64,000 nucleotides of DNA from Selaginella moellendorffii. Its lineage: Eukaryota; Plantae; Lycopodiophyta. The stretch is taken from assembly GCF_000143415.4 (NCBI RefSeq), contig NW_003314290.1, positions 1,726,454 through 1,790,453 on the forward strand. The letters are read 5' to 3'. Positions 1-45,604 of the stretch are shown here, one piece after another. The position numbers and the translations under genes were made by a program. Each line of letters opens with the position of its first letter. Within the stretch, counting starts at the first letter, position 1. A model generated the notes under the pieces. The model saw nothing but the letters and a program-made list of their open reading frames with translations. It did not search any database and had not been told where the DNA came from.

Positions 1-884
1 GTAGCGGTCAAGAGGATTGGCGGTGGATCGCGGCAGGAGGACAAGCAATTTAAGGCGGAGGTGATGTCGATTGGCAGCATCCATCACCTCAATCTCGTCA
101 AGCTGGATTTTGCCTGCATTCTCCCCACAACTTACTCGTCTACAAGTTCCTCGCCAATAGCTCGCTGGATAGATGGGATTTTGCCAAGGACAAGTACCTG
201 CCCTGGGCAACCAGGCTTTCCATCGCGCTCGACGTCGCTTGAGGGCTTGCGTATCTCCACGATGGATGCCGCGAGAAGGTACTCCGTCTAGACATCAAGC
301 CACAGAACATCCTCCTGGACGAGAAGATGAATGCCAAAATTGCCGACTTTGGATTCTCAAAGTTCATTGACAAGGACAAAACGCATGTCGTGACAGTCAT
401 GCGGGGCACGGTGGGATACATGGCTCCCGAGTGGCTCCACTCTCGTGTCACGGACAAGACGGAAGTCTATAGCTTTGGAATCGTCCTCCTGGAGCTTGTT
501 TGTAGCATAAAGGCCGTGGAGTGTTCCTTGTACTCGGACTCGCAGATGGACGTTGTGTTCCTCACCCAGACCGCTTTTAACAAGCTCCACAGTGGAAACG
601 CCAAGGACTTGGTGGACGATCGGCTGCTCAAAGCCGAGGACGGTGGTGGTTTTTTCTTGAGTGGCTTTGAGAACATCCTCCTGATCGGGTTATGGTGTAC
701 GCAGGAGGATCCCTTGCGGCGACCAACGATGTCTGTGGTGGTGAAGATGCTCGAGGGTGCCATGGATGTGTTGGCGCTCCCTCAGCTGGAGAGACCCGCT
801 GCACAGGATTCATCGCTCTTGGTGAGCAGCAGCGAGAGCTCGGGAGTGCAGATCTCCATCTCGGTTTTGGACTTGGCTCGCTAA
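1..884 (+). pseudogene. Receptor-like kinase pseudogene (kinase domain of a kiwellin-RLK-B paralog; 5' part outside window)
   Basis: Nearly colinear with 44590-45440. Has a 4-bp deletion near 106 (aagctggattttg vs aagctggttggattttg in the intact copy) and an in-frame TGA at 240-242. The C-lobe ORF 327-884 (DFG, GTVGYMAPEWL) is still open. Confidence 0.88.
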
Positions 885-9140: not shown

Positions 9141-9259
9141 GGGCGCCAAGGAGCAAGGCTCTGGTGGACGGGATTCTCAGCGTGCTGTCGCGCGGGCGGT
9201 ATGCTAGTTCTTCCCGTGTCCACGGCAATGCATGGCTCCTATAAAAGCTACGTCATATG

Positions 9260-17286: not shown

Positions 17287-18379
17287 GTGGCCCCATTTGC
17301 AACCCTGTTAACCAGACTTGTGATGGCGATCTAGGAGATACCACCCTTTCTTGCCCAATTCCCGATTGTGAGCCCGCCCAAGAGCGGGTAAAATGCACAA
17401 TTCAGCACCCCCGTTTATTTAGGGTGGCACTATTTGCTTATTTAGATTTACATGCCACTTCATTACTTACACTTCATTATTATAAATTAAAGATTCTCAA
17501 TAAGATAAGAAATACTATCTGAGCATGATTTATATATTCAGAATGCCACCGCCCACAACCAGGTATCAGTACTTCACTTGCTCGCTGCAAGAGCAACCTC
17601 TTAGTTTCACGGCTTTCTAAGAAGATGGGCACCACATGGGCGCCCGCGGACTTTGGATTCTCAAAGCTCATCGACAAGGACAAGACTCACGTTGTGACGG
17701 TGGGATACATGGCTCCAAGTGGCTCCATTCTCGTGTCACGGACAAGACCGACGTGTTCCAAAACCCCTCCGGAGATCATGGGGGTATGGTGGAATCTTTG
17801 GTTCCAACCTGAAGTGTGCCGGGATTCGCGACAAGCGGCACCCCACGATGCTATAGCTATGGAATCGGCCTCCTGGTGTTTGCAGCATAAAGGCCGTGGA
17901 GTGTTCCTTGGACTCGGACTCGCAGATGGACGTCGTGTTGCTCGCCCAGACCGCTTTCAACAAGCTCCACAATGGAAACTCCGTAGTCTACAACCAACTG
18001 CTCAAAGCCGAGGATGGTTTCTTTGAGTGGCTTTTGAGTACATCGTCCAGATCGGGCTATGATCAGGAGGATCCCTTGCAGCGACCAGTTGTGATGAAGC
18101 TTCTCGAGGGTGCCATGGATGTGTTGGCGTTCCCTCAGCTGGAGAGACCTGCTGCACAGGCTTCGTCCCTCCTCATGAGCAGCAGTGCAAGTTCAGGAGT
18201 ATAAATCTCTATCTCAGACTTGGCTCGCTAAAAAGGCGTTTTTACAAACAAGGAAACTTTGCAAGAAGAATTTATTCCATAGCAGGTGGTAGAAATGCTT
18301 GTGCAAGATAAAAAATACTTATTTTCTTTTTAGTAAAGCATATATAAGAGAATTTGTTTCCAACCAAATACTGTTTTAA

Positions 18380-19478: not shown

Positions 19479-19795
19479 TTACAGACTGCTGGAGCTGAAG
19501 TTAAGGGATTCAGGTGGTCGCAAGCTGAAGTTTCTCAAGCTACCCTCACTTGAAGGTGGTGGCAACTCAAGAACATCTACGCTACCATCGAGCATATCCA
19601 ATACGTTTCTCATGGAGGGTCGCATTGCTGTTCGGCTTGGATACACCACAATCCAATCTTCAGGTATCTCTCGGCATCCTTGAAATCCAAGCCACTGCTG
19701 CTGGCGATATCGTTGTTTAGATTATTGACAAAGAGCTTCTCGTCTATGAGCTCCACAACTTTGCCACTGTAAAACATGCTCAATGCGGCTGTACC
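19479..19795 (-). pseudogene. 3' remnant of kiwellin-RLK-A
   Basis: Matches 41454-41768 (GTAALSMFYSGKVVELIDEKL..GLWCIQAE). Has a 1-bp deletion and is truncated at a deletion junction at 19795. Confidence 0.9.
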
Positions 19796-20435
19796 TCCTC
19801 GCCAAGGACAGGTCCCTGCCTTGGGCATCCAGGCTCTCCATCGCGCTCGACGTTGCCCGGGGGCTCGCCTATCTCCACGAAGGATGCCGCGAGAAGATAC
19901 TCCATCTAGACATCAAGCCCCAGAACATCCTCCTGGACGAGAAGATGGGGGCCAAGATCGCCGATTTTGGATTCTCCAAGCTCATTGACAAGGAGAAGAC
20001 TCACATCGTGACCGTCATGAGGGGCACGGTGGGATACATGGCTCCCGAGTGGCTCCACTCTCGTGTCACGGACAAGACGGACGTCTATAGCTTTAAAATC
20101 GTCCTCCTGGAGCTTGTTTGCAACATAAAGGCTGTAGAGTGTTCCTTGGACTCGGACTCGCAGATGGACGTTGTGTTCCTCATCCAGACCGCTTTTAACA
20201 AGCTCCACAGTGGAAATGCCATGGACTTGGTGGACGATCGGCTGCTCAAAGCCGAGGACGGTGGTGGTTTCTCCTTGAGTGGCTTCGAGAACATCGTCCG
20301 GATCGGGCTATGGTGTGCGCAGGAGGATCCCTTGCAGCGACCAACGATGTCTGTGGTGGTGAAGATGCTTGAGGTTGGCATGGATATGTTGGCGTTGCCT
20401 CAGCTGAAGAGACCCGGTGCACAGGATTCATCACT
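19796..20435 (+). pseudogene. 3' remnant of kiwellin-RLK-B (kinase C-terminal part only)
   Basis: Matches 44773-45400 (LSIALDVARGLAYLHEGCREK..HLDIKPQN). Promoter, ectodomain and N-lobe are missing. Confidence 0.88.
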
Positions 20436-20604
20436 TTCGTTTCTATATATTTAGATTCCTCAACGAGAAACCAGAAGGTACTATTTTTTACAAAATTCAC
20501 AAATATACCATTTTATATAGCTGTATAAATATCAAAACACTCCACACATTGTGTTTATCTACTATTACATGCAAACAAGCTCCATGGATTTCAATCTAAA
20601 AACA

Positions 20605-25300: not shown

Positions 25301-25381
25301 CCCCCTACTATACTTTTGGAGCTCACCAAACCCCCCAGGGTCTGGGAGACGAACGCTTTGGGCTTTCACCCTCTCAGGCTC

Positions 25382-28800: not shown

Positions 28801-31203
28801 TCCTTTTATGACATTGACTTACTATATCGCAACACAAGCAACTTATCCCCCGTAAGGGTATATCCAACTTCCCTATACTATTAAGAAGTCTTGGGTAGCT
28901 ACCTTCTACCCGTTTAACTAATTATTTTGCACCTCTTGCTTAGTTGCCTCATAGTTGTCAAGTCCTACAACTCATTGCTTGGTGCTTCCACACCTCCATC
29001 ATTATCTGGGTCACCACACTCCAACTGCATGCTCTGCAGCTTAGGCTATGCCATTCCCATTTCCATTGGGATTCCTTTGGCAAGGGGTTCTCATGAACCC
29101 ACGAACATAGCCTCAAGGTATCACACCTTGGCACATTTAGTGTCTCCACACCATCGGCTCCACGAGCCTACCTCTATGACACTTCCCCTTTGTGTCTAAG
29201 TCTTTGCCAAGACCAACACCGCTCTCTCTCATGCCAACCATCCGTTAGCACTGCATCATAGAGGTCGCACACAACTTTGTGTCAAAGTTGTTTTCTTCTG
29301 GGAACACCTTTCCCATAACTTCAGCATGGCACATTTTGCCATTGATGAGATACCCTCTGTTCTCATCCTTGGATCCTATGATCCCCCCCCCATCTTTCAT
29401 GGGGTACAACACACCTCAGTCCAAATGCTTCCATCAGTTCTTTTTAGGACCATTCCTTGACTCTACTTGAGTCATCCAGCAGTTTTGGACTTGGTTATTC
29501 CACAGACCCGTAAAGTCCCACTTGTGAGGCACTAGCTCACTGGAATACACTTCCTGCATTCCTGTCCTACTCAGAAGGACTATTTTCACAAGTGTTACTC
29601 TGACACTTGATTTTGTTCTTTGGGGCAACCTCTGCCCCTTAGGACTACTTGTCCATGTGATGAGAATACCAACTCATCTCTAAGTACACCCCCGAACTCC
29701 TTGGGTTGTTCCAGCATTTATTAAAGGTAGCGCCGGCTACCATTTCAAGGACTTGAGTCCTCTTCCGTATTTGACCTCCCACGGTCATTACTTTTGGTCT
29801 CACATTCATGAGCACCAACCTCAACTATATGAGGATAATCTTGTGACTCCTTTATTGTTTTGGAGTCTTTATCTTTCCCGTCATCCTAACTGTAGTTGTT
29901 TACCACAACTACATTAGCCAGTTTGCTAAGTCAAACGCTCATCTAGGTCACATCCTCAACTCTCTGAGGAAAACCATATACTGTTCCCAAGATCCCAAAG
30001 TCGTTCCCTTACTGGCCCCTTTTCTATCCACCACATCGCGCCCAAGTTCATGCATGAACTCGAGTGGAGAGCCATGTCCTCTCAACGTGCTACTCCTCAA
30101 GGATAGGCCCACTCCTAGGACCTTCCGATGCCAATATCAATGGTGATATACTTGAGCACCAATAAAAGTCAGACTAAGGAACAGCTCCGATACCAAGTTG
30201 TAAGCGACTAATTTTTCCATTCTACTTTAGTCACTTAACCACACCTCCGACCACTTGGAGGAGTCTCATTCACAACCTCCATAAGTCCAACTCAGGACTT
30301 GGGGCTTGTTAGCCCCGAGAATGGCATCCATGCCACTCAACCTTAGCACTTGGTCCAAGTGCTCCACATGTCCGATCCCATGATCGACACCCCAAGGTAC
30401 CACTGACGTATCAGCCCGTTACACTAAGGCCATGCCCAATTACCTTGGTCACACTGGTGGTCCAACACCACCTGCATTCCAATCCCGTCTCTCAAAGACT
30501 GGGTCATCCGTCCATGAGGGATCATCCCAGATCCACTCCTTAACATCCTTAGGATGCCTACAGACATGGGGAATAGCCTTCCCCAATATCTCTGTTCCGG
30601 TCCCCACCAAGTCCCTTTCTGTCCTTGGCTGTGTTCGCCAACACTGCCACTGGATCAAGGCCCACCGGCCCGACCACTAAGTCCCACTATCCTCGAGGAC
30701 TTCCTCACTGTGTGACTGTGTCCTTGGTCACCCCACCAGAGGGCTACCCCTCTTCCTTTCCACAGTCTGGGACTTTGGGACACCATTTCGGAACACCGTG
30801 GCCTTACACGAGCCACCTGGGTACTCTCCCCACCTTTCGCCTTTAGGTGCTCTAGCCATGGGCTTAGAGCGAGGTTCCGTTGAGCCACGCCTGGTATCCA
30901 AGTAGGTAGTGCCACCCACACTTGGACTGGGAGCATCGGCCAGTCGATCTCCCGGGGGAACTAGAGCCGGCTCTTGAACACTTCACCAAGCTACCCCGCT
31001 TGTCGGTCCGTGTTCACTCTAGTTTTGGACTTCCCAGTGGGCAGCTCATCACCCAACACTGGGTCCGGCCTTCCTGGGCCAAACTGGCCTTTCCTGGCCA
31101 AACTGGCTCCATTGCAGTCCTCCCCCCTACTATACTTTTGGAGCTCACCAAACCCCCCAGGGTCTGGGAGACGAACGCTTTGGGCTTTCACCCTCTCAGG
31201 CTC

Positions 31204-31781
31204 CGGACTCGGACTCGGACTCGGACTCGGACTCGGACTCGGACTTGGACTTGGACTCGGATTCGGACTCGGACTCGGACTTGGGCTCGGCCTCGGTCTC
31301 GGTCTCGGGCTCGGCCTCGGTCTCGGTCTCGGTCTCAGTCCCGGTCTCGGTCTTGGTCCCGGTCTCGACTTTGGACTCCATCTCAGGTCCATCTCGGACT
31401 CCAACTCGGACTCCATCTCGGGTCCATCTCGGGTCCATCTCGGGTCCATCTCGGGTCCATCTCGGACTCCATCTCGGACTCCACCTCGGACTCCGTCTCG
31501 GGTCCACCTCGGACTCCGTCTCGGGTCCACCTCGGACTCCATCTCAGGTCCATCTCGGGTCCATCTCGGACTCCATCTCGGACTCCATCTCAGGTCCATC
31601 TCGGACTCCATCTCGGACTCCATTTCGGGTCCATCTCGGGTCCACCTCGGACTCCACCTCGGACTCCATCTCGGGTCCATCTCGGGTCCACCTCGGACTC
31701 CACCTCGGACTCCACCTCGGACTCCATCTCGGACTCCAACTCGGACTCCACTTCGGACTCCAACTCGGGTCCATCTCGGAC
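31204..31781. repeat. Minisatellite inside the second LTR, about 100 bp longer than in the sister LTR
   Basis: Same motifs with different copy numbers. Confidence 0.95.
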
Positions 31782-33165
31782 ACTTCCATGTGTCATGTGT
31801 TGGTCCCTTTGGGTCCCTTTTTGGAGCCTCGCTTATTGCTCGCTTCGTGCTCATTCCTCGAACACTTTGTTGGGAGTTCCACTCCCGCTCTCAACCTTTC
31901 AAGTCGGAGCTTTTAGTCCAAACGTTTTACGCTCATTTGGCTTTCGCTTCGGCCACTACCACGTGGCACCTCTCCAGCTCCACTCTGGGGCCTAGGGACT
32001 TTGTGTCTCACATCACGCATGAGATAGCTAATTCTTTTGTGGTATACCTGTTTCTTTCTAATATGATCATGTCTGATTTGGAGTATGTTCATGGGCATAG
32101 GGCTAGGGTGGATTCCATTCAGGAGGAGTTTCGTGACGTATTTCCGAATGAGTTACCTGATGGTTTGCCTCCCAAACATGGCATTCAACATAAGATTGAC
32201 TTGGTTCCTAGAGCTACTCCTTATCAGCGACAACTGACTTGTACTAGTCCTGCTGAAGACAAAGAGATTAATAGGCAGTTTGCTGAATACCTTCGGAAAG
32301 GGTGGTTACGGATTAGCAAGTCCCCTTAGGCTGCTTCAGTGGTGATGGTCAAAAAGAAAGATGGTACATAGCGTCTCTATGTGAATTACAAGGGATTGAA
32401 TGATAGGATAGTGAAGAATATGTTCCTGATCCCTCATATCGATGATTTGCTTGATCGTCTTCATGGTGCTCAATATTTTTCGAAGATTGATTTGAGGCAA
32501 GGGTATCATCAGATTTGTGTCAAGCTAGAGGATGTTCCAAAAACTACATTTTGGACAAAGATAGGTCACTATGAGTTTGTAGTGATGTTGTTTGGTTTGA
32601 CAAATGCTCCTACAACTTTTTAGAGATTGATGAATCAAGTTTTACAACCTTACTTAGGAAAGTTTGCAATTGATTATTTTGATGATATCCTGGTATTCAG
32701 CTTTTCTATGGAGGAATATGAGATGCATGTGTGAAGTGTTTTACAACTTTTGAGGGACAACAAGTTCTACTCAAAGTTATCCAAGTGTGAATTTTTTTTA
32801 GAGGAGATTGAATATCTCGGGCATTTGATTTTAGTACATAGCATGAGAGTTGATCCTGCAAAGATTTAGGCCGTGGTTGATTGGCCTATACCTTTGATAG
32901 TGCATGATCTCCATAGTTTCTTTGGTATGGCTGGAGTTTTTCGACAATTTGTGAAGGACTTTTCAGGGATAGCAGCCCCTTTAACTGATCTTCTCTAGAA
33001 TATGTCAAAACATACTACTATTCATGGTTGGGATGAGAACTGTGAAGTGGCATTTCAACGTTTGAAATAGTGTTGTATCTTTGCTCCAGTGTTGAAGATT
33101 TTTTATCCTAAAAAGCTTCTTGTGGTTGAGATAGATACAAGTGACATTGTTATTAGAGTTGTATT

Positions 33166-34286
33166 TGTCGCGAATGTGACTTTGGATATCGAAAGTTATC
33201 TGTCGGTCAGTCCTTACGGACACTCTTTCCTTACTGCCACGATGGTAGGGGGTTGGTATTGCTGAATTCGTTATCAATTTCCCACTTGAGTTAGTTGAGA
33301 AACTGGTCAATGACCATGTATTTAGATTGGATAAACATAAGGTAGGAACCCTATGTGTTTCTTGTTGAGCATACTCGGCCTGGTTTGAGAAACTTGAGTC
33401 ATTGGCTTGCACTTACTAGTATCAAGAACCCCCGCGATATTAAGACTAGTCCCTCAGTATTTGCTAAATGATAGCTTATTGTGTTTGCCAAACACCCTCG
33501 CTATCATGCCTTTTGTGTTAGTTTCATTTCGGTCTTAAATGCTATTTATAGATTTGCTCATTTGGCATATCTACGGAATGTAGAGATTGGCCTGAACACA
33601 ATGGTGTTCGTCCCGTGTCCAAATTCGCAATCTAGCGCCATTTCATATTTAGTAAGTTTCGAGCTTGTCCCAGAGATTAACTCCTGATACTAAGGGAGGC
33701 TTGGGGTGAAAACCCAAAGCATGTGTTCCTCAAGGGGGGGGGGGGCTGTGGGGGGTTCCAAATATATAGTAGGGATAGTGGCTAGGTTGAGCATGGCCGA
33801 CCAACTTGAGGCATAGTCTAGCTCCTGCTTGCGTGCTTGTCCTTGTTTTGCATCCGGCTTGGGTCTAAGCCCAAGTTCCATTCCATGCTAGCTGGTGGAG
33901 TACCCATGTCCATGCATTAGGCCACCGATATGCCAAAATAGCACTAGACTCAATTTGGCTCTGTTTTGCGTGTTGGTCCTGGCATTGGGATGCTAGTTAC
34001 TTTAAGACTGTTCCAAGTCGCTCTGGGCTCCTGTCCCTTCGCTCCTTCAGCTGTATGCTCGAGAGTTACTCCGTGGTCCGGTTCCGTCACTCCTTAGCCC
34101 CATGCTTGGGAGTTTGGCACCGTTCCTTTGTTTAGTAGCCCAAGGCCCTGAACCTTGGGTTCCACACCACCATCCTTTGGACACATGGCATGTGTCACGT
34201 GGCATAAAGAGGGTTTAAGTTCCGCTTCGTGGTGTTATCCTATGGTAAACCACCATAGGATAAAGGTCAAAACCACATGCGCTACA
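33166..34286. mobile_element. Solo LTR inserted in the Gypsy RNase H
   Basis: tgtcgcg...cgctaca termini and perfect TSD gtatt (33161-33165 / 34287-34291). Splits VEIDTSDIVIRVV|LLQVGHP. Confidence 0.85.
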
Positions 34287-37200
34287 GTATTGCTTCAAGT
34301 TGGGCATCCTTTTGTGTACATGAGCCATAAGTTTGATGCCATACAGCAGAACTGACTCGAGACAAGGAGTTGTATGTTGTGATTGCTGTTATGAAGGAAT
34401 GGCGACATTATTTATATGGATCGGACTTTTATGTGGATTTAGACCATCAGTCTCTCCAATATTTTAGTCAACAAAAGGATCTTCTTGGCTGCCTTGCTCG
34501 TTGGCAAAAGTTCCTATAGGAAATGTCTATTAAGATATGGTACAAGCATGGAGGTGAAAATAAGGTGGTTGATGCATTATCCAAGATGGTAAATTCTATC
34601 TCGTTCGTGAAGTTATCCAACGATCTCTTGGATGAGCTTAAGGAGTTTGCTGACTTCGACTCCTTTATCACTGATATTTGCGTGAAGGTTTTGTTGAGGG
34701 ACACCTCTACAGATTTGAAGAGTGACAAGTTTGCGTCATTTGAAATACAAGATGGAATCCTGGTGAATAAGGGACATGTAGTGGTTCCTTCATATTGACA
34801 AACTCATCAAACGGATTTTGGTTGAGTGTCATGATGTGCCAAGTGCTGGGCATCCGGGGGTATTGAGAATGTATATGTTGGTGAAGAGGCATTTCTTTTG
34901 GCCTGGGATGAAGTCAGATGTTGAGAAGTACGTACTTGGTTATTTGATCTATCAGGTGGTCAAAGTTGATCATCAAAAGCTTGCTGGCCTCTATCATCCT
35001 TTACATATATCCGAGAATAAGTGGGATAGCATCTCAATGGACTTTATCATTGGTTTGCCCAAAACCTTTCAAGGAAATGATGCTATTTGGGTTGTTGTGG
35101 ATCATTTGACGAAGGTGGCTCACTTCTTCTTTGTGAAGACAACAATAAAAGCTTCTGAACTTGCTCAGTTATTTGTAGACCAGTTATTCAGTCTCTATGG
35201 TTTGCTGGGTGACATTGTGAGTGATCGGGATCCTAAGGTCACATCCAAGTTTTGGCAAACGGTCTTTGAAAAGCTAGAGACTAAGCTGAGCATGAGTAGT
35301 GGTGAGCATCCACAATCTGATGGGCAAACAAAGCACATGAATCAACTATTAGAAGATATGCTAATATCTTTTATGGGAAACTTGACTTGATAGGGAGTAT
35401 GGGAGAAGTATTTGCCTTTGCTTCAGTTTGCTCACAATATTGCTCATCAATCAGCTATTGGCATGTCTCCCTTTATGGTGATGTATGGCTATGAGCCTAA
35501 GTCTCCTGTGAATTTGAATTTAGCTTTGGTTCGGGTTCCTTATGCTTATGATTTCCTGGAGGATATGCAAGACAAGCTTGAGTTGGCAAAATTGAACATG
35601 AGGCAAGCTCAAGAGCGAGACAAAAGATTGGCTAATGAATATCGTCGTTATCAAAAGTACAAAGTTGGTGATAAGGTTTTCTTTAAGCTGTTGTATGCAC
35701 AACAGTCTCTAAAAGGAGGTGGCAGTGCTAAGTTGTTTCCATGGTATTATGGACCTTGGATAATTTTACAGTGTGTGGGGGATTTTACATACACTTTGGA
35801 CTTGCTAGTTAGTTTGAAGATTCATCCAACGTTCCATGTGAGCAAACTTAAAGCATGTTTGCACTCTGGTGATATCGTGGATCAGTCCATCATCCAGGTT
35901 CCAAAGATTGATGCAAAGAAGGCTGGTCCAGCCAATATTCTTGCTCAAAGATTGGTGAAAATACACCAGAAGACAACTAAGGAGTTGTTAATTCAGTGGA
36001 ATGGTTATTCCATGGATAAAGCTATATAGAAAACTAAAGATGACATGAAGAGAGTGTTTCCGAGTTTTGGTTATGACTTGGATGACATTCCTGAGGAAGG
36101 GGAGAATTGAATTCTATAGCCGTATTGCTATATGATTTGAGCCATTTATTCTATTCTCATTCTTTTGTTTCCATGACCGTATTGTCATGTGAGAAAGCTG
36201 TATTGCCTTCTTTCTTTTATAGTTGTTTGTCACGATGTTGGTGTTGCTATTTGCACATTTTTTCTCCATGGCCGTATTGCCTTGAACTCCCTTCATGTGA
36301 GGCTTGTTTAGCTTCTCGAAGTTGTTATATAATGCTAGGTTATGAGGGAGGGGACACAAACTATATGAATATTCTAAGAATATTCCATGGCCTATGGGAT
36401 TTAAGGCCATAATGCCTCAAGGGTTGGGAGGCTAGCCTAGGGTTCACTCTCTTGTTCGTTTCACTAGGCAGGATTAGAAAGAAAAACTTTCTAAAAAATT
36501 TCTAGCTTCAAAGATGACATCATCCTTTAAAACCCTCTCCAGAATCTGCACGACAGAAAGTAAGTTTCACCAATCAAAGTTGCACCATACCTTTGGATAA
36601 GAAGATTTTACAAAATAATGATTCTTTTTTAGAACTAGTTTTACTTTGCCATAGTTGAGAGTCAACTCTTTGCCATTCCATCACTGTAATAACTATCTGA
36701 GACTCAAGACCAATGGAGAGAGCTGCATACAAAGAATGTGGTGTGAGATTGTACTCGTGCATATGTTCTAGCCTGGAATAAAGTTTCAAAGAAAATACTT
36801 GAGTGTAAGAACTTCTAATATCAGCGAGACCTGAAGCTTATTGACACACCAGCTTGGCAGTCACAATGAGAAAGTCATATGCTTGCTTGTGTAGCAGAGA
36901 AAATGTCCTATCAGGTCCAACCCAGAGTGGTCTCTTCTTGTGGTCTGGCTTTAGCTCGAACTTGCTAAAATCCATTACCAGTATGGGGATAAAGAAGAGG
37001 AAGAGCAACACAGTTCACAACAAATCCTATCCTTCTAAAGGTTAAAAGGAACTAGAAAGAGAAAAAAAAAAAAAGAGAGTAAAGAGATGAATGCTCTCTT
37101 CTTTTATGCCGTGATCAACAAGAATTTTGGGGGGTGGGTGGGGGCTTGACCAAAATTTCATCAAGGAAGAGATCTTATGGTGACTGTTAAATCAACCTTA

Positions 37201-38259: not shown

Positions 38260-39990
38260 TGGATCATCACAGCGTTTCCCTTCGGGCTCGTGGTGGTGTT
38301 GATCACTTCATTCGCCAGCTCCACCGCACAGCAATTCTCTTCCTTCTGCAACAAGAGATGCGACTTTGCACTTGTTCTGGCAGCCCCATTTGCAACCTTG
38401 TTAACCAGACTTGCGATGGCAATCCAGGAGATACCCCTTTATTGCCCAATTCCCGATTGTGAGCCTGCCCAGAGCGGGTAGAATGCACAATTCAGTATCC
38501 TTTTTTATTTATGGTGAGCCCCATTTGCTTATTTGGATTTGCATGCCACTTAAAGATTCTCAATAAGATAAGAAAAAATAAGATTACTATCTTGAGCATG
38601 ATCTAAAGAGAATGATGAAAAAAAAGAAAATATAAAAAGGAATACAAAACACAATGAAGGAAAACTTAAACCAAGCTTAGGTTATATACTTATAAATCCA
38701 CTACCAGTTAATAACATCTACTAATTATAATTTAACGTTACTAATTTAAATTTAGTCGCTCAATATTTAGGGCTGCGTGGCACAAAGCACCAAGTGAGCG
38801 TGGCAAAAGAGTAACCACGTAAGAGAGGGTGCATTTCTCCCCCAGAGCTTCATCTACTTGAATGCCACCGCCCACAACCCAGGTATCAGTACTTCACTTG
38901 CTCACTGTGCCCCTCACGACGGTCACGATGTGAGTCTTGTCCTTGTCGATGAGCTTTGAGAATCCAAAGTCGGCGGGCGCCCATGTGGTGCCCATCTTCT
39001 TATCCAGCAGGATGTTCTGGGGCTTGATGTCGAGATGGAGTTGGCATCCTTCGTGAAGATATGTGAGCCCTCGGGCAACATCAAGCGCGATGAAGAGCCT
39101 GGATGCCCAAGCCAGGCACTTGTCCTTGGCGAATCCAGCGAGTAGACGAGCAAGAGTGGAGGCAAAATCCAATCATCTTGACGAAATTGAGGTTGTGAAT
39201 GCTGCCGATCGACATCACGTCATGATCGACATCACGCCTTGGCAAATCCATGAGATTGCCGAGATCAAGCGGCCCCACGGCAGCTTGGAAGTCCGTCGCA
39301 AGAACTTCCACCACACTAGCCTTAAGAGCGCCAAGCTGATGAACGGCAGCAATGGCAATCTGTCTAGAGTTGGAATTCTCGCCCTTCCAGCTCCAACCGA
39401 CAGCCAAATCGAAGTAGTGCTTCTCACACCACTCGCGTCCCTCCCACCACCTCGATGCCGTGAAATTAAAAGGTTCCGAGTGCCTCCATTCTCGTGTCAC
39501 GCACAAGACCGACGTGTTCCAAAACCTGTCCCGGGACCATGGGGGTATGGTGGAATCTTTGGTTCCAACCTGAAGTGTGCCGGGATTCGCGACAAGCAGC
39601 ACCCCACGATTTGGAATCGTCCTTCTGCTGTTTGCAGCATAAAGGCCGTGGAGTGTTCCTTGGACTCGGACTCGCAGATGGACGTCGTGTTCCGCTTTCA
39701 ACAAGCTCCACAATGGAAACTCCGTAGTCTACGACCAACTGCTCAAAGCCAAGGATGGTTTCTTACCAACTGCTCAAAGCCAAGGATGGTTTCTTTCTGA
39801 GAGGCTTTCGAGCACATCGTCCAGATCGGGCTATGATCAGTTGGATCCCTTGCAGCGACCAGTTGTGATGAAGATTCTCAAGGGGTGCCATGGATGTGTT
39901 GGTGTTCCCTCAGCTGGAGAGACCTGCTGCACAGGCTTCGTCCCTCCTCATGAGCAGCAGTGCAAGTTCAGGAGTATAAATCTCTATCTC
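38260..39990 (+). pseudogene. Kissper-kiwellin RLK-B paralog pseudogene, copy 2, with internal inversion (about 38908-39473)
   Basis: Empty-site version of 11741/17287 (ctggcagccccatttgc). Kinase, TM and ectodomain pieces lie on the minus strand at 38908-39473, flanked by plus-strand pieces. Confidence 0.82.
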
Positions 39991-40420: not shown

Positions 40421-41135
40421 TCACCCACCGAATTTGTTCTTGTAGTCTGTCCACAAATCCTGTAAGCTCTTTCCAAGCAAATCACTGAACACAGACTCAC
40501 TCCACGCATCATTTGCAAGCCTCGCATTCATCTGCCACACAAAATCTCCCCAGAGGCTATTGCAGTAATCGAAGAAATAGGCAGTAACATCGTAGCCCTG
40601 GTCCCAGCGATCACCACCACCCGGCTTCACCCAGTGAGATGGAGCGAGCCCGGCTTTGAGCCGGACATAATCAGCCACTCCTTCAGTCACTCCACTGGGA
40701 GTTCCTTGCCCAAAGTACTGCCAGACGTGAGCCATCTCGTGGTATATTACCCCTGTGATCCCCTCGTAGTTATCGGCAGATGGAGCATTAAACTGGATCT
40801 GGAACTCGCCGGGACACCGTCCCAAATGTGATAGCAACCGCACCCTGCTGGAGCTGCTTCTCGACCGTGAAGACAACCTTGGTCACTAGTTTTGTGGGAA
40901 CACTGTCGAGACCATTGTGCAACAGCGGCGGGATGAAGTTGATTGCATCGCCCAGGACTTTGAAGGCCCCGGAGATCCCCATCACCGAGTTGAAGCGCTT
41001 GCCACCGTCGGTGTCCTCGGCATTGTTTGCTCCGACCAGGACAATGTCTGCATGGACACGGGAAGTGATAACGAGAACAAGGGACAAGCAGCTCAAAAGA
41101 TGTGCAGTGGAAACTCTCAGACAAGTTTGCGTCAT
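40421..41135 (-). pseudogene. BSP/PR-17 copy 2, frameshifted
   Basis: Nearly identical to 18380-19096 but 2 bp shorter (gggacaccgt vs gggactgcccgt at about 40816), which splits it into two ORFs. Confidence 0.9.
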
Positions 41136-41453
41136 TGTTAATCGCAAAAATCAATATCGTGTGAGGAACGCAGAAAGTTGGCTCATGAAGGGGTTTATAA
41201 AGTGTTTGTACGCGGTTATGGCTACGAAGTCAACGTATTTTGACTACGCGGATTTGGCTTCGACACGGCACTATATGGAAAAATGCTTGAGCCCGGGTTG
41301 ACTTCTAGTGTGTGAGACTAGCGTGATGACCAACTACACCACCCAGACTGTGACACTAAGTTGGTTTCCACAACTAATTTACAATGAAGCTGATTGCTTT
41401 TCCAGAGATATTTCTTGTGGGACGTTTTAGAGTTTCAATATAGTGGTGTAACA

Positions 41454-43388
41454 TTACAAACTGGTGGAGCTGAAGGAGGATTCAGGTGGTCGCAAGCTAA
41501 AGTTTCTCGAACTACCATCACTTGAAGGTGGTGGCAACTCAAGAACATCTATGCTACCGTCGAGCATATCCAATACGTTTCTCATGGAGGGTCGCATTGC
41601 TGGTTCGGCTTGGATACACCACAATCCAATCTTCAGGTATCTCTCGGCATCCTTGAAATCCAAGCCACTGCTGCTGGCGATATCGTCGTTTAGATTATTG
41701 ACAAAGAGCTTCTCGTCAATGAGCTCCACAACTTTGCCACTGTAAAACATGCTCAATGCGGCTGTACCAAGGAAGTGCACTGTCGGTTGTGAGGAGGAGG
41801 AGGAGGAGGATGTCAAAGGATGAAATTCCAAGGCCCGCTTGGAGGTTACAAGCTCAAGCAGCACAATTCCAAAGCTGTAGACGTCGGTCTTGTCCGTGAC
41901 TTTGGTATGGAGCCACTCGGGCGCCATGTATCCGGGAGTTCCTCGCATGACAGTCACCACCTGACTCTTTCCTCGCTCGGCGAGCTTGCTCAGGCCAAAG
42001 TCGGAGATCCTGGCTCGCAAGTTCTCGTCCAGGAGGATGTTTTGCGGCTTGATGTCCAGGTGAAGAACTTGCTCCCGGCATCCCTCATGGAGATACGTGA
42101 GTCCTCGAGCAACATCTATCGCGATTGAGTGTCTCTGGTTCCAGTCCAGCAGGATTCCGCCAGCTTTGCCATCATTGTATTCGGTGAAGATCCACTTGTC
42201 CAATGAGCCATTGGGCATAAACTCGTAGACAAGCAATGCAGCTGGTCCCTGGATGCAAAATCCCCGGAGCCTTACCAAGTTGAAGTGATGGATGCTTCCA
42301 ATGGACATCACCTCGGCCTTAAACTGTGACTGTCCTTGTGTAGAGCCTTCTATCTCTACATCCATTTTCTTGACAGCAACCAGGCTTCCATCTGCAAGCT
42401 CCCCCTTAAAGACGGATCCAAATCCGCCAGCTCCGAGCATGAACTGTGGAGCAAAGTTTCCAGTCGCTGCTCTCAAGTCGTGATAGCTAAACTGGTGTGG
42501 AAGTAACTTATCGAGCCTCATTCCATCCATGAGCGCTTGCTCATCTTTTCTTCGCCTCTCAAGAGATCTCCTCCATCGCCTGGTTGCTGTGAAGGCTGCG
42601 ACACTAACCAACACCACCACCACAGCACCCACTATGCCAGCAATTAATCCCAGCTTGCGGTTCATGCGTCTTGGAGACGGTAATTGTGGAGGATTACTGT
42701 TAGTAGTGATACTCCAGGTGATATTTTCTACGATTCCAATGCCTGGATCATACCCAAGCTGCCTCCACACTTGCTCGTTCGCTGCCACGGCATTTGGAGC
42801 ACAGGGCTCCGTGAACGAAAAATTGCCGAGACACCCTCCCCCGGAGTAGCATTGAGCCACGACTCTGGCCACCACAGTTCGTCCATTTGGAGCTAAAACT
42901 TGGATATTCGTGGAGCACAAGCTTCGGTCTTGGTTATACCACCCAGTGGCCACCGCCGCCATGAGATCAAAATCCCACCCGAAGGACGTGCACGACCTGA
43001 GAGAACCCGGATTTGAGAGATTGAATCTTGTGACATATAAGACGGCATTGTTGGTCTCTTGAAAAATTGGAGAGCAAGTGAAAGTCCTGTAAGCCAGGCC
43101 TGGGACGCAGCAATTTGGGCAGTCTGGAGCGATGGTGTCATTGAAAACAAAGCTGGAACTGGGCTGGCAAACGTCTGAATCGCTAAGGTATGGCTCGGAT
43201 CGATTGCTCGCTTGGTAGCAGGACGAGTTCCGGAGTGAACGGTTGCCGCCGAGCATGGGCTCCGGGAAACAAAGGGACCCATTTTGGCAATCGGTCGACG
43301 AAGAACATACCTGTTGTTGGGCTTGCGAGTAGTGGAAGCTCTTTGCGCTACATGCTAGGACGATGATGAAGCACAGGAGTACCTCCAT
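41454..43388 (-). CDS. Kiwellin-ectodomain receptor-like kinase A (644 aa, intronless, non-RD)
   Basis: Signal peptide; Cys-rich N-terminus; kiwellin/ripening-related motifs CCVPG..FTCSP, AVATGWYN, C..NI.V.APNGRTVVARVVAQC, GC..EPC.PN.V..VW..LG....G...ITWS; single TM; kinase GAGGFG, VAVKK, HLDIKPQNILLD, DFG, GTPGYMAPEWL. Confidence 0.92.
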   Translation of the reverse strand: MEVLLCFIIVLACSAKSFHYSQAQQQVCSSSTDCQNGSLCFPEPMLGGNRSLRNSSCYQASNRSEPYLSDSDVCQPSSSFVFNDTIAPDCPNCCVPGLAYRTFTCSPIFQETNNAVLYVTRFNLSNPGSLRSCTSFGWDFDLMAAVATGWYNQDRSLCSTNIQVLAPNGRTVVARVVAQCYSGGGCLGNFSFTEPCAPNAVAANEQVWRQLGYDPGIGIVENITWSITTNSNPPQLPSPRRMNRKLGLIAGIVGAVVVVLVSVAAFTATRRWRRSLERRRKDEQALMDGMRLDKLLPHQFSYHDLRAATGNFAPQFMLGAGGFGSVFKGELADGSLVAVKKMDVEIEGSTQGQSQFKAEVMSIGSIHHFNLVRLRGFCIQGPAALLVYEFMPNGSLDKWIFTEYNDGKAGGILLDWNQRHSIAIDVARGLTYLHEGCREQVLHLDIKPQNILLDENLRARISDFGLSKLAERGKSQVVTVMRGTPGYMAPEWLHTKVTDKTDVYSFGIVLLELVTSKRALEFHPLTSSSSSSSQPTVHFLGTAALSMFYSGKVVELIDEKLFVNNLNDDIASSSGLDFKDAERYLKIGLWCIQAEPAMRPSMRNVLDMLDGSIDVLELPPPSSDGSSRNFSLRPPESSFSSTSL

Positions 43389-43652
43389 AGCTGCAGACGA
43401 CCACTGTTCATAGCGACGACCATGGGATTATATGATCAAAACTTCAAATAGATGAGATCGGAGAAGTCGCATCAGTGCTTTTTCTATGGTCATGTTTAGT
43501 GTGAAGCTCTGGCAGTATCCTGATGGCAAGTAAGAAAAGTCAAACAAGGATCCTTGGAAGGTTCATATAGCGCTTCCAATTCTTAAAGTTTTTCATTGAC
43601 TTTTAGATAGAGCTTTTAAACTAACTTACCTGGTCCAGGGCAAGCTCCAGCC
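43389..43652. promoter_or_regulatory. 264-bp bidirectional promoter region of the RLK pair with two W-boxes
   Basis: Divergent ATGs at 43388 and 43653. agtcaa at 43538-43543 and ttgact at 43596-43601. Confidence 0.6.
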
Positions 43653-45491
43653 ATGGATCGTCGCACCACTTTCTTCGCGCTCGCGATGATCTTGATCTCT
43701 TCACTCGCCGGCGCCACCGCACAACAGTTCTCCTCCTCCTGCGGCACGAGATGCGACTCTACGCGCGATTGTTCTGGCGGCCTCGTTTGCAATCCTATTA
43801 GCAAGACCTGCGATGGCGATCCATCAGCTAGCACTCTTTCCTGCCCAATTCTCGGCTGCGAGCCCGCCCAGACCTTCGTCTACTCGAATGCCACCGCCCA
43901 CAACCCAGCACTTTGCTTCGACAACACCACCTACCAGTTCTTCAATTGCTCGCCGCAAGAACAGCCTCGCAATTTCGCGGCATTCTACTTCATCGAGCTG
44001 GAGGAGTCCCCTACGAGTTGCAATCGCTCGACGCCGCCAAGGAATTCGGAGCTCCTGGCGTCCATGTCCACGGGGTGGTTCGCCAATGGATCGTCGTGCC
44101 ACAGAGAGATCGTGATCACGGCGGAGAATGGGCTGAGCGTGACGGCGACAGTGATCGACCAGTGTGGATCGAACATCGGGTGTACCGCAGACACTGGATT
44201 CTATGGGCCGTGCTCGCCCAGATCGCTGGGAGGGACGAGAGCGGTGTGGGAAGCGCTGGGGCAGACCTACTTTGATAATGTGTTGGCGGTCACTTGGAGC
44301 TGGAAGGGCGAGGATTCCAACCTGAGAGATCGCAATATCGCCATTGCCGTGGTTTCCAGTGGAGCGATCGTCGTCTTGGCGCTCCTAGGGCTAGTGTGGT
44401 GGAAGTTCTTGCGACGCTCATCCAATGCTGCCGTGAGGGAGCGGCCGCTCGATCTCGGCAACCTCGCGGATTTGCCACGGCAATTCAAGTACCAGGAGGT
44501 GTATCGAGCGACCAAGGGATTCCAGAGCAAGGTGGGACAAGGAGGATTTGCGAGTGTGTTCAAGGGAACGTTGCCCGGCGGGGAGATTGTGGCAGTCAAG
44601 AGGATCGGAGGTGGAGTGCGGCAGAGGGACAAGCAATTCAAGGCGGAGGTGATGTCGATTGGCAGCATCCATCACCTCAATCTGGTCAAGCTGGTTGGAT
44701 TTTGCCTGCATTCTCCACACAACTTGCTCGTCTACGAGTTCCTCCCGAATGGCTCGCTAGATGGATGGATTTTCGCCAAGGAGAAATGCCTGTCCTGGGG
44801 ATCCAGGCTCTCCATCGCGCTCGACGTTGCCCGGGGGCTCGCCTATCTCCACGAAGGATGCCGCGAGAAGGTACTCCATCTAGACATCAAGCCCCAGAAC
44901 ATCCTCCTGGACGAGAAGATGGGCGCCAAGATCGCCGACTTTGGGTTCTCCAAGCTCATCGACAAGGACGAGAGTCACGTCGTGACGGTCATGCGAGGCA
45001 CGGTGGGATACATGGCTCCCGAGTGGCTCCACTCTCGAGTCACGGAGAAGACTGACGTCTATAGCTTTGGGGTCGTCCTTCTCGAGCTCGTTTGCGGCAT
45101 GAAGGCCGTGGAGTGTTCCTCGGGCTCGGGCTCACAGATGGACGTCGTGTTCCTCGGACAAACCGCTTTCAACAAGCTGGACAGTGGAAACTCGATGGAC
45201 TTGGTGGACGATCGGCTGCTCAAAGCCGAGGATGGTGGTGGTTTCTCCTTGACTGGCTTTGAGAACATCCTCCGGATCGGGTTATGGTGTACGCAGGAGG
45301 ATCCCTTGCAGCGACCAACGATGTCTGTGGTGGTGAAGATGCTCGAGGGTGCCATGGATGTGTTGGCATTCCCTCAGCTGGAGAGACCCGCTGCACAGGC
45401 TTCTCCACTCCTGGCGAGCTCGGGGCAATTCTCCATCTCGGTCTCAGGAAGAGATCGTCTCAACTCTCGGATGGAGCTCGATAAAAGCTAG
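43653..45491 (+). CDS. Kissper-kiwellin-ectodomain receptor-like kinase B (612 aa, intronless, non-RD)
   Basis: Signal peptide; kissper-like C-x3-C-x5-C-x5-C-x6-C-x10-C; kiwellin core FNCSP, ASMSTGWFANGSSCHREIVITAENGLSVTATVIDQCGS..GC..PC..AVWEALG..VTWS; TM; kinase VAVKR, HLDIKPQN, DFG, GTVGYMAPEWL. Confidence 0.93.
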   Translation: MDRRTTFFALAMILISSLAGATAQQFSSSCGTRCDSTRDCSGGLVCNPISKTCDGDPSASTLSCPILGCEPAQTFVYSNATAHNPALCFDNTTYQFFNCSPQEQPRNFAAFYFIELEESPTSCNRSTPPRNSELLASMSTGWFANGSSCHREIVITAENGLSVTATVIDQCGSNIGCTADTGFYGPCSPRSLGGTRAVWEALGQTYFDNVLAVTWSWKGEDSNLRDRNIAIAVVSSGAIVVLALLGLVWWKFLRRSSNAAVRERPLDLGNLADLPRQFKYQEVYRATKGFQSKVGQGGFASVFKGTLPGGEIVAVKRIGGGVRQRDKQFKAEVMSIGSIHHLNLVKLVGFCLHSPHNLLVYEFLPNGSLDGWIFAKEKCLSWGSRLSIALDVARGLAYLHEGCREKVLHLDIKPQNILLDEKMGAKIADFGFSKLIDKDESHVVTVMRGTVGYMAPEWLHSRVTEKTDVYSFGVVLLELVCGMKAVECSSGSGSQMDVVFLGQTAFNKLDSGNSMDLVDDRLLKAEDGGGFSLTGFENILRIGLWCTQEDPLQRPTMSVVVKMLEGAMDVLAFPQLERPAAQASPLLASSGQFSISVSGRDRLNSRMELDKS

Positions 45492-45604
45492 CGTGTCAGC
45501 TTTCGAGTGTTTGGCCTGGATGAATGGAGTGTTTTGCTTTCCTGCTAGAATTCTTTGACCTTCGCTCGCGTGATCTTTCTCTTCTCTACTTTCTTTATTC
45601 TTGG

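What the first reader, a model, noticed from the sequence alone, without database searches (positions are those of the whole stretch)
41454..45491. Head-to-head pair of receptor kinases with kiwellin (barwin-like DPBB) ectodomains
Seen: two intact, intronless SP-ectodomain-TM-kinase genes are transcribed divergently, with only 264 bp between ATGs. Both ectodomains carry kiwellin signatures (CSP, [S/A]TGW[YF], NG.[TS]V.A.V..QC, GC..PC, VW..LG, TWS), and both kinases are non-RD (HLD). Established: kiwellins are normally small secreted defence proteins (maize KWL1 binds and inhibits the Ustilago maydis chorismate mutase effector Cmu1), non-RD kinases are enriched among pattern-recognition receptors, and paired divergent immune genes are typical of sensor/helper NLR pairs. 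Inference: an effector- or glycan-binding defence protein has been fused to a kinase to make a surface receptor, possibly acting as a co-regulated heterodimer. Best-hit annotation would likely call these SD2-5/G-lectin-type RLKs because of the kinase and miss the ectodomain. I cannot confirm from here whether this architecture has been described.
Basis: partly seen in the sequence, partly recalled or inferred. Interest (0 to 1): 0.92.

Follow-up and report, generated by a model that had tools for sequence, protein, structure and literature searches.

The report
Paired kiwellin-ectodomain receptor kinases, Selaginella
Two back-to-back, expressed genes in the spikemoss Selaginella moellendorffii encode cell-surface receptor kinases whose outer part is a kiwellin, normally a small secreted plant defence protein. 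This receptor type was absent from the literature I could search; it is kept as head-to-head gene pairs and arose a second time, independently, in cacti.

Summary
Gene A (41454-43388, minus strand, 644 aa) and gene B (43653-45491, plus strand, 612 aa) are intact, intronless and 264 bp apart at their start codons. Both have a signal-peptide-like N-terminus, a kiwellin ectodomain, one transmembrane helix and a complete kinase.

- **Ectodomain:** Pfam KWL1 scores 75 and 72 bits against a cutoff of 27. AlphaFold models match solved kiwellins at TM 0.76-0.91.
- **Expression:** RNA contigs from four studies cover both genes, show no splice joints, and leave the intergenic stretch empty.
- **Organism and naming:** This is Selaginella moellendorffii. 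NCBI names these proteins SD2-5, L-lectin or PERK kinases, so the ectodomain is missed.
- **Evolution:** Kinase and ectodomain trees agree. A kiwellin replaced the lectin ectodomain of an SD-2b kinase once. The A/B split followed, and the head-to-head pair was then copied repeatedly (five A+B loci plus relics, usually 240-291 bp between ATGs), with frequent decay of one partner.
- **Selection:** dN/dS is 0.13-0.23 in the kinase and 0.27-0.64 in the ectodomain.
- **Second origin:** An independent kiwellin-SD-2b fusion exists in cacti; Carnegiea has an intact 592-aa ORF that is mis-modelled in NCBI.
- **Non-RD motif:** HLD is a general SD-2b trait, not special to this pair.

Immune function and A/B heterodimerisation remain inference.

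The parts
41454..43388 (-). Gene A (A1): intronless 644-aa signal peptide - kissper/kiwellin ectodomain - TM - SD-2b-type kinase
   Evidence: ORF; Pfam; RNA contigs without joints, adaptor-tagged ends at 41446 and 43410,
42684..43325 (-). A ectodomain (aa 22-235): kiwellin DPBB domain with N-terminal Cys-rich module, 14 Cys, 8 N-glycosylation sequons
   Evidence: KWL1 75 bits; PDB phmmer 1e-21; AF2 pLDDT 78 and Foldseek top hits 6fpg/6ti2/4x9u/4pmk; features
42576..42665 (-). A transmembrane helix (aa ~242-271) followed by the basic stretch RRWRRSLERRRK
   Evidence: Hydropathy peak 2.86
41571..42440 (-). A kinase domain (aa 317-606) with all catalytic motifs; non-RD HLD
   Evidence: Pkinase 149.8 bits; motifs; SD-2b placement
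43389..43652 (.). 264-bp shared intergenic region, a putative bidirectional promoter. Not transcribed in the middle. Ends conserved between pairs. Two TTGACT (W-box-like) cores at 43541-43546 (reverse strand) and 43597-43602.
   Evidence: Zero RNA depth at 43505-43671 in 4 runs; alignment of four pairs' spacers; sequence
43653..45491 (+). Gene B (B1): intronless 612-aa signal peptide - kissper/kiwellin ectodomain - TM - SD-2b-type kinase
   Evidence: ORF; Pfam; RNA contigs 43682-45497 without joints
43716..44327 (+). B ectodomain (aa 22-225): kissper-like module plus kiwellin DPBB domain, 14 Cys, 5 N-glycosylation sequons
   Evidence: KWL1 71.6 bits; aligns to kiwifruit kiwellin residues 2-187; AF2 pLDDT 86.7 and Foldseek TMt up to 0.91
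44328..44414 (+). B transmembrane helix (aa ~226-254) followed by KFLRR
   Evidence: Hydropathy peak 2.65
44523..45335 (+). B kinase domain (aa 291-561) with all catalytic motifs; non-RD HLD; G-loop GQGGFA
   Evidence: Pkinase 153.6 bits; motifs
1..806 (+). Kinase part of B2, the broken partner of intact A2 (P0002), which lies just off the window's left end. This is pair 2 of the same cluster.
   Evidence: tblastn 85% to B; window 1-8826 is identical to L002; L002 gene table
17613..18159 (+). B-type kinase fragment (relic)
   Evidence: tblastn
19509..20454 (.). Relic pair. An A-type C-terminal fragment (19509-19795, -) abuts a B-type kinase fragment (19780-20454, +). Both 5' halves and the promoter are deleted.
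   Evidence: tblastn; ORF list
38903..39434 (-). B-type fragment (relic)
   Evidence: tblastn

Best explanation
Genes A and B are the best-preserved pair of a small, lineage-specific receptor-like-kinase family of Selaginella moellendorffii. SHOWN: (1) Each protein is signal peptide - kissper/kiwellin double-psi beta-barrel ectodomain - one TM helix - catalytically complete kinase of the SD-2b (G-lectin RLK) lineage. (2) Both are transcribed as unspliced mRNAs from a ~260-bp shared spacer. (3) Ectodomain and kinase trees have the same topology. All Selaginella kiwellin-RLKs form one clade next to Selaginella's own G-lectin SD-2b kinases. They split into an A clade and a B clade, each with the member of the oldest pair (L007) at its base. 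So one domain swap (kiwellin replacing the lectin ectodomain) came before the A/B split, and the head-to-head A+B unit was then copied several times. (4) The family evolves by birth and death: intact pairs, pairs with one decayed partner, and relics. The intact genes are under purifying selection, and the ectodomain evolves 2-4 times faster than the kinase. INFERRED: the proteins sit in the plasma membrane with the kiwellin domain in the apoplast. That domain binds a ligand, most likely a secreted microbial protein by analogy with maize KWL1 clamping the Ustilago effector Cmu1, or less likely a wall-derived glycan as in other DPBB proteins. Binding activates the non-RD kinase, giving a surface immune or damage receptor analogous to PR5K. 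A and B, made from one bidirectional promoter, plausibly act together as a receptor/co-receptor heteromer, but this is the least supported step.
For: Anatomy. Expression without introns, with a silent spacer as internal control. Organism and misleading names. Kinase lineage: the nearest non-kiwellin relatives are B_lectin SD-2b RLKs at 43-48% identity. In the tree, Selaginella KWL-RLKs plus Selaginella G-lectin SD-2b form a clade at 100/99, A clade 99/96, B clade 99/97. Ectodomain tree: the 11 Selaginella RLK ectodomains form one clade at 99/96, A 97/88, B 100/98, with the L007 members basal in both. Conserved head-to-head units: window 264 bp, L001 291 bp, L002 290 bp, L003 259 bp, L004 ~1.15 kb, L007 240 bp between start codons. 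Purifying selection: dN/dS kinase 0.125-0.23, ectodomain 0.27-0.64; A1-A5 dS saturated. Rarity: 351 representatives match the ectodomain profile in 1.84 billion proteins, and among the best 150 only the Selaginella family and P0042 carry a kinase. Convergence on the same design in cacti suggests that a kiwellin on an SD-2b kinase is a workable receptor. Kiwellin-effector precedent: solved complexes 6fpg and 6ti2 are the best structural matches.
Against: There is no functional datum for any member: no ligand, no localisation, no kinase assay, no pathogen-response expression. Signal peptide and TM rest on hydropathy only. Overall dN/dS is below 1 in the ectodomain, so there is no gene-wide arms-race signature. 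Heteromer idea: after duplication, one partner often decayed while the other stayed intact (A2 and A3 intact with B2 and B3 broken; Bx intact beside only an A fragment). Each type can therefore persist without its local partner. A tight pair is also copied as a unit passively, so conserved adjacency is weak evidence of co-function. The cactus fusion is a singleton with no divergent partner within 10 kb. The W-box-like cores in the spacer are about what a 1-in-30 chance would give. The non-RD state is inherited from SD-2b and says nothing specific.
Confidence: 0.7

Rival explanations
1. A and B are independent receptors. The head-to-head arrangement is a passive relic of one ancient inverted duplication, copied along with every later segmental duplication because the spacer is so short. 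There is no heterodimer and no required co-regulation.
For: Pairs with only one surviving partner are common. All pairs descend from one ancestral arrangement, so they count as one event and not five. The independent cactus fusion works, if it works, as a singleton. The A:B depth ratio varies from about 0.45 to 3 between runs, though depth is a poor measure.
Against: The 240-291 bp spacing is kept even in the L007 pair, whose synonymous sites are saturated relative to pair 1. Both partners of the oldest pair and of pair 1 (both haplotypes) remain intact under purifying selection. Both genes are detected in all four RNA data sets.
Confidence: 0.4
2. The family has a non-immune role, for example cell-wall integrity or developmental sensing. 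The DPBB ectodomain would bind a wall polysaccharide or an endogenous peptide instead of a pathogen molecule.
For: After the kiwellins, the next structural neighbours are expansins, loosenin, barwin and GH45 endoglucanases, which bind or act on wall glycans. Most kiwellins have no known ligand (Klemm 2022, PMC9813671). The genes are expressed in four unrelated RNA data sets with no known challenge. There is no gene-wide positive selection.
Against: The only mechanistically understood kiwellins bind a fungal effector protein (6fpg, 6ti2). The family shows birth-and-death turnover and fast ectodomain change typical of immune receptor clusters. Neighbours are defence-type secreted proteins (BSP, class III peroxidase) and, at L007, an NADPH oxidase, though this is only circumstantial.
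Confidence: 0.25
3. The genes are decaying or are annotation artefacts, with ectodomain and kinase not made as one protein.
For: Many family members are broken. NCBI models for several are truncated or chimeric (P0001, P0011, P0031, P0125). No listed RNA contig bridges 42629-42684 in gene A.
Against: Both ORFs are uninterrupted over 644 and 612 codons, and the allelic copies are also intact. dN/dS is well below 1 in both domains. RNA covers both ORFs with no joints, and for B one contig spans ectodomain, TM and kinase start.
Confidence: 0.03

Closest known systems
Kiwellins (Pfam PF24300; kiwifruit kiwellin/Act d 5, maize KWL1 and KWL1-b)
   Same: The ectodomains are homologous by sequence (E ~1e-21) and by fold (TM 0.76-0.91). 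Both have 14 cysteines. B and the oldest pair keep the N-terminal kissper-like Cys module.
   Different: Known kiwellins are small soluble secreted proteins of about 190 aa. Here the domain is tethered to a TM helix and a kinase. The Selaginella RLK ectodomains form their own long-branched clade, apart from Selaginella's stand-alone kiwellins (P0134, P0268). The family survey by Klemm et al. 2022 lists larger kiwellin-containing proteins but reports 'no further domain' and never mentions a kinase.
SD-2b G-type-lectin receptor kinases (e.g. Arabidopsis SD2-5; At5g20050-like short forms)
   Same: The kinase domain belongs to this lineage by best hits and by tree, and shares the HLDIKPQN non-RD signature.
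   Different: The B_lectin/S-locus/PAN ectodomain is absent and replaced by a kiwellin. Database names based on the kinase are therefore misleading.
PR5K / thaumatin-like receptor kinases (Wang et al. 1996, cited in PMC10868138)
   Same: Same design principle: a secreted pathogenesis-related-type, cysteine-rich defence protein serves as the ectodomain of a receptor kinase. DUF26/CRK and, from my own knowledge, chitinase-related CHRK1 are further analogues.
   Different: The ectodomain fold differs (thaumatin versus DPBB kiwellin), as does the kinase subfamily. PR5Ks are not known to me as conserved head-to-head pairs.
Head-to-head sensor/helper NLR pairs (RGA4/RGA5, RRS1/RPS4; established knowledge, not tested here)
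   Same: Two diverged paralogues are transcribed divergently from a short shared spacer and kept together through repeated duplication. One could read the kiwellin as an integrated effector bait.
   Different: These are cell-surface kinases, not NLRs. Both partners carry the kiwellin domain, so there is no obvious sensor/helper asymmetry. Co-dependence is untested, and single survivors exist.
Cactus kiwellin-RLK (Carnegiea gigantea L009:10001-11779; metagenome protein P0042)
   Same: Same architecture (signal peptide, kiwellin, TM, SD-2b kinase), also intronless, with the same HLD kinase signature.
   Different: Independent origin. Its kinase nests in the angiosperm SD-2b clade, and the AU test against one clade with Selaginella gives p = 6e-59. 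Its kiwellin is angiosperm-type and related to a stand-alone kiwellin 4.5 kb downstream. It lacks a kissper module in the Pfam match and has no divergent partner within 10 kb.

Membership tests
Kiwellin (PF24300 KWL1) | Sequence match above Pfam gathering threshold | tested here: met
   A 75.0 bits, B 71.6 bits, cutoff 27. The L007 pair scores 83.9 and 75.9 bits.
Kiwellin (PF24300 KWL1) | Double-psi beta-barrel fold superposable on solved kiwellins | tested here: met
   AF2 models have pLDDT 78 and 86.7. The top nine Foldseek PDB hits for each are kiwellins, TMt 0.76-0.91, rmsd 1.6-2.9 A over the barrel.
Kiwellin (PF24300 KWL1) | Conserved cysteine framework and core motifs (CSP, TGW, NG..V.A.V..C.S..GC, PC, VW..LG, TWS) | tested here: met
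   Both ectodomains have 14 Cys. Invariant or nearly invariant columns are shared with 31 stand-alone kiwellins.
Kiwellin (PF24300 KWL1) | Small soluble secreted protein | tested here: not met
   The domain is followed by a TM helix and a kinase in one ORF and one transcript. It is therefore a kiwellin-domain protein, not a classical kiwellin.
Kiwellin (PF24300 KWL1) | Binding and inhibition of a secreted microbial effector (as KWL1 does with Cmu1) | not testable with these tools
   Needs pull-down or ITC with candidate ligands.
Receptor-like kinase (RLK/Pelle), SD-2b kinase lineage | Kinase domain groups with SD-2b kinases | tested here: met
   Best non-kiwellin hits are B_lectin SD-2b RLKs. 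In the tree, the clade with Selaginella G-lectin SD-2b has 100/99 support. HLDIKPQN is shared.
Receptor-like kinase (RLK/Pelle), SD-2b kinase lineage | G-type lectin (B_lectin / S-locus / PAN) ectodomain | tested here: not met
   No such Pfam hit at E <= 1. The ectodomain is a kiwellin.
Receptor-like kinase (RLK/Pelle), SD-2b kinase lineage | Signal peptide, single TM and catalytically complete kinase | tested here: met
   Hydropathy and motifs. No dedicated signal-peptide predictor was available, and kinase activity itself was not testable.
Genetically paired immune receptors (sensor/helper-like) | Divergent orientation with a short shared promoter, conserved across paralogous loci | tested here: met
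   Five A+B loci plus an extra Bx/A-fragment unit in L001 and relics in the window. Spacing is 240-291 bp in five units and ~1.15 kb in one. A and B clades are congruent.
Genetically paired immune receptors (sensor/helper-like) | Co-expression of the partners | tested here: inconclusive
   Both are detected in all four RNA runs, but contig depth is not a usable expression measure and no condition series was examined.
Genetically paired immune receptors (sensor/helper-like) | Physical interaction and mutual genetic dependence | not testable with these tools
   No multimer prediction or experiment was available. Single surviving partners at L002, L003 and L001 argue against strict local dependence.

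The most novel reading that the evidence does not exclude
The A/B pair is an obligate heteromeric cell-surface immune receptor in which a kiwellin, an effector-binding defence protein, has become an extracellular 'integrated bait'. It would capture secreted pathogen effectors (for example chorismate mutases) and convert binding into kinase signalling. That would make it the apoplastic counterpart of NLR-integrated-decoy pairs, invented in lycophytes and reinvented as a singleton in cacti.
Probability: 0.15. Interest if true: 0.9.

Novelty: new variant of a known kind. Interest (0 to 1): 0.62.

Why it matters
Kiwellins are one of the few plant apoplastic proteins known to neutralise a fungal effector directly. 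Finding them wired to a kinase would show that plants can turn an effector inhibitor into an effector sensor at the cell surface, a concept so far documented mainly for intracellular NLRs with integrated domains.

The family offers several things:
- A receptor class absent from RLK classifications and from the kiwellin family survey.
- A natural experiment in convergence: the same ectodomain fused to the same kinase subfamily in a lycophyte and in cacti.
- A rare case of receptor kinases kept as head-to-head gene pairs through repeated duplication, which makes the receptor/co-receptor question directly testable.

It also exposes systematic mis-annotation, both in kinase-based names and in mis-spliced gene models, which hides such architectures from surveys.

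Tried and rejected
1. Word-indexed searches with either ectodomain, keeping full-length candidates, found only S. moellendorffii proteins. That could have been a sensitivity limit, so I added the exhaustive profile search and a full-length search. These turned up the L007 pair and P0042.

2. I considered that P0042 showed an ancient, shared kiwellin-RLK lineage. The kinase tree and AU test reject this (p = 6e-59). The ectodomain-only AU test was not decisive (p = 0.061).

3. I considered non-RD status as evidence for a pattern-recognition role. I dropped it because all SD-2b kinases share HLD.

4. I considered long kiwellin hits (P0125, P0126, P0216, P0262 and others) as further fusions. Pfam shows tandem kiwellins or a chimeric F-box model. 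P0125 turned out to be a mis-spliced model hiding a real kinase fusion.

5. I looked for promoter motifs. Only two W-box-like cores turned up, near chance level, and there is little conservation in the middle of the spacer.

6. Literature: no paper joins kiwellin with a receptor kinase. The only hint is an unexplained count 'Barwin-RLK 2' in a table of RLPredictiOme (PMC9603095). I could not trace it to species or genes.

7. The scan's own notes had nothing near this place or under these words.

8. Not done: site-wise positive-selection tests (too few sequences), multimer prediction (no tool), and an expression series (one read-laying run only). The remaining 201 weaker hits of the exhaustive search and the unlisted hits were not inspected, so further rare fusions may exist.

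Full report
**Observation**

A is 41454-43388 on the minus strand (644 aa). B is 43653-45491 on the plus strand (612 aa). 264 bp separate the two ATGs.

Pfam finds the kiwellin model KWL1 (PF24300) in both N-terminal halves, at 75.0 and 71.6 bits against a gathering cutoff of 27. It finds a protein kinase domain in both C-terminal halves. The proteins are 42% identical along their whole length.

Hydropathy shows an N-terminal signal-like segment and a single strong TM segment followed by a basic stretch. Each ectodomain has 14 cysteines and 5-8 N-glycosylation sequons. The kinases keep GxGxxG, VAVK, HLDIKPQN, DFG and APE.

**Ectodomain identity**

By sequence alone the ectodomains hit the four solved kiwellin sequences. 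These are maize KWL1 and KWL1-b in complex with the Ustilago effector Cmu1 (6fpg, 6ti2) and kiwifruit kiwellin (4pmk, 4x9u), at E 1e-21 to 2e-16. B aligns from residue 2 of kiwifruit kiwellin, that is, through the N-terminal kissper module.

AlphaFold2 models built on a 40-sequence alignment have mean pLDDT 78 for A and 86.7 for B. For each model the nine best Foldseek matches in the PDB are all kiwellins (TM by target 0.76-0.91, rmsd 1.6-2.9 A over the barrel). Expansins, loosenin, barwin-like, cerato-platanin and GH45 DPBB folds follow. The kiwellin/DPBB call is therefore solid.

**Expression**

Contigs of four RNA data sets from four different studies cover A (about 41446-43410) and B (about 43682-45497 and beyond). 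There are no joints. Depth is zero over 43505-43671 in all four, which serves as an internal control that this is RNA and not contaminating DNA.

In one run, adaptor-tagged contig ends fall at 41446 and 43410, which suggests very short UTRs for A. For B, one contig (43869-44529) runs from the ectodomain through the TM to the start of the kinase. For A, no listed contig bridges 42629-42684, in and just upstream of the TM-coding segment, so full SP-to-kinase continuity of the A transcript is very likely but not strictly shown.

**Organism, naming and locus structure**

The nearest database proteins are all from Selaginella moellendorffii. They are named after the kinase only: 'G-type lectin S-receptor-like kinase SD2-5', 'L-type lectin-domain receptor kinase S.7', 'PERK10' and 'At5g20050'.

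The window's first 8.8 kb is identical to the locus that carries P0002, so the window lies on scaffold GL377594.1. L001 on GL377575.1 is the other haplotype, 96-98% identical from 40.4 to 55.6 kb. That haplotype also has intact A (646 aa) and B (612 aa) ORFs. NCBI's 570-aa model P0001 is a mis-model.

**The pair is the unit of inheritance**

Fetching every paralogous locus showed an A-type and a B-type gene, or their remains, head-to-head each time. Spacing is the distance between start codons.

| Locus | A-type | B-type | Spacing |
|---|---|---|---|
| Window | A1 intact | B1 intact | 264 bp |
| L001 | intact | intact | 291 bp |
| L001, second unit | fragment only | Bx intact | not measured |
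| L002 | A2 intact | B2 broken | 290 bp |
| L003 | A3 intact | B3 broken | 259 bp |
| L004/L006 | A4 truncated at the C-terminus, plus another broken A | B4 intact | ~1.15 kb |
| L005 | broken copies only | none detected | not applicable |
| L007 (oldest) | 630 aa, complete | 589 aa, complete | 240 bp |

Both proteins of the L007 pair carry KWL1 and Pkinase. The window itself holds relics. These are the kinase half of B2 at 1-806, B fragments at 17.6-18.2 kb and 38.9-39.4 kb, and a collapsed pair at 19.5-20.5 kb in which an A 3' fragment abuts a B 3' fragment. This is birth-and-death evolution of a pair.

**Phylogeny**

A kinase-domain tree (35 sequences, IQ-TREE with mixture model) gives the following:
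- All Selaginella kiwellin-RLKs group with two Selaginella G-lectin SD-2b kinases in one clade (100/99).
- Within it there is an A clade (99/96) and a B clade (99/97), each with the L007 member basal.

A kiwellin-domain tree gives the same picture:
- The 11 Selaginella RLK ectodomains form one clade (99/96), separate from Selaginella's stand-alone kiwellins.
- It splits into A (97/88) and B (100/98), with the L007 members basal.
- Stem branches are several times longer than in the kinase tree.

Hence there was one fusion, then the A/B split, then co-duplication of the pair.

Pairwise dN/dS is 0.125-0.23 for the kinase and 0.27-0.64 for the ectodomain. Synonymous sites between A1 and A5 are saturated. 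The genes are therefore constrained, the ectodomain less so, and the arrangement is old.

**How rare is the architecture?**

A profile of six ectodomains was searched exhaustively against 1.84 billion representative proteins and found only 351 matches at E <= 1e-3. Among the best 150, the only proteins with a kinase are the Selaginella family and one metagenome protein, P0042.

P0042's kinase nests inside the angiosperm SD-2b clade (99/98). Forcing it into one clade with the Selaginella genes is rejected (AU p = 6e-59). Its kiwellin domain is 92% identical to the first domain of a Carnegiea gigantea protein.

The saguaro locus contains an intact, intronless 592-aa ORF (L009:10001-11779) with KWL1 at 187.6 bits and Pkinase at 185 bits. 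NCBI's model splices out the kinase and joins a stand-alone kiwellin 4.5 kb downstream. So the same design, a kiwellin on an SD-2b kinase, arose independently in Cactaceae. There it is a singleton with no divergent partner within 10 kb.

**Literature**

No paper in the searchable library combines kiwellin with a receptor kinase.
- The kiwellin family survey (Klemm et al. 2022, PMC9813671) mentions 61 larger kiwellin-containing proteins. [quoted passage not shown]
- Large RLK surveys and a 2024 review do not list such a class.
- A machine-learning survey lists an unexplained 'Barwin-RLK: 2'.
- The closest described analogue in kind is PR5K, a thaumatin-like PR protein fused to a kinase.

**Interpretation**

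Shown:
- the architecture
- its transcription
- its single origin within the SD-2b lineage of Selaginella
- conservation and turnover of head-to-head pairs
- purifying selection
- an independent second origin in cacti

Inferred:
- plasma-membrane topology
- ligand binding by the kiwellin domain (a microbial protein by analogy with KWL1-Cmu1, or a glycan by analogy with other DPBB proteins)
- an immune role
- cooperation of A with B

The non-RD motif is common to all SD-2b kinases. The ectodomain shows no gene-wide positive selection. Many duplicated pairs retain only one partner. Circumstantial context includes a basic secretory protein gene and a class III peroxidase gene flanking pair 1, and an NADPH oxidase gene next to the L007 pair.

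**Verdict**

This is a real, well-supported feature, and I found no published description of it. I class it as a new variant of a known kind: a receptor kinase with a PR-type ectodomain. It has two unusual properties, conserved divergent pairing and convergent origin. Function is untested.

Noticed in passing
window 40421-41147 (-) and 45605-~46750 (-): Pair 1 is flanked by a basic secretory protein (BSP, PF04450) gene and a class III peroxidase gene. Both are secreted, defence-associated families. The same neighbours occur on the other haplotype (L001).
   Followed up: partly
L007:11933-15717 (-): The oldest kiwellin-RLK pair lies directly next to an NADPH oxidase (Rboh-type) gene, the enzyme class that makes the immune ROS burst. 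This could be coincidence.
   Followed up: no
L009:10001-11779 (+) and 16112-16789 (+), Carnegiea gigantea JAKOGI010000032.1: There is an intact 592-aa kiwellin-TM-kinase ORF here. NCBI's model (P0125, KAJ8448161.1) splices out the kinase and fuses it to a downstream stand-alone kiwellin. This is an independent cactus origin of the architecture. P0042, from JGI metagenome 3300010395, is 88% identical at DNA level and presumably comes from another cactus.
   Followed up: yes
L001:7769-9709 (-); L007:9854-11746 (+) and 7844-9613 (-): Several NCBI gene models of the family are wrong. P0001 (570 aa, with invented introns) hides an intact 646-aa ORF. P0011 and P0031 start downstream of the true signal-peptide-encoding ATGs.
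   Followed up: yes
window 19509-20454: A collapsed pair: an A-type 3' fragment on the minus strand abuts a B-type kinase fragment on the plus strand. It looks as if a deletion removed both 5' halves and the shared promoter.
   Followed up: partly
window ~22600-36500: This stretch has raised GC (up to 0.57) and strongly negative GC skew. It shares 83-91% identical segments with regions of L003 and L004 that carry a chromodomain/Tf2-type retroelement gene, so it is probably LTR-retrotransposon insertions inside the receptor cluster.
   Followed up: partly
protein P0127 (Closterium sp. NIES-65, CAI5992497.1): A tandem two-domain kiwellin occurs in a zygnematophyte alga. This suggests kiwellins predate land plants, earlier than the 'oldest embryophyta' statement in the 2022 family survey.
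   Followed up: no
window 1-8826: This stretch is 100% identical to L002 (GL377594.1), which places the window on that scaffold. Intact A2 (P0002) lies about 1.2 kb to the left of the window start.
   Followed up: yes
RNA run X12 ('organism B'): A run labelled with a different organism code holds the pair mostly at 95-99% identity. It may be the other haplotype, another accession or a close relative. This could not be resolved because names are coded.
   Followed up: no
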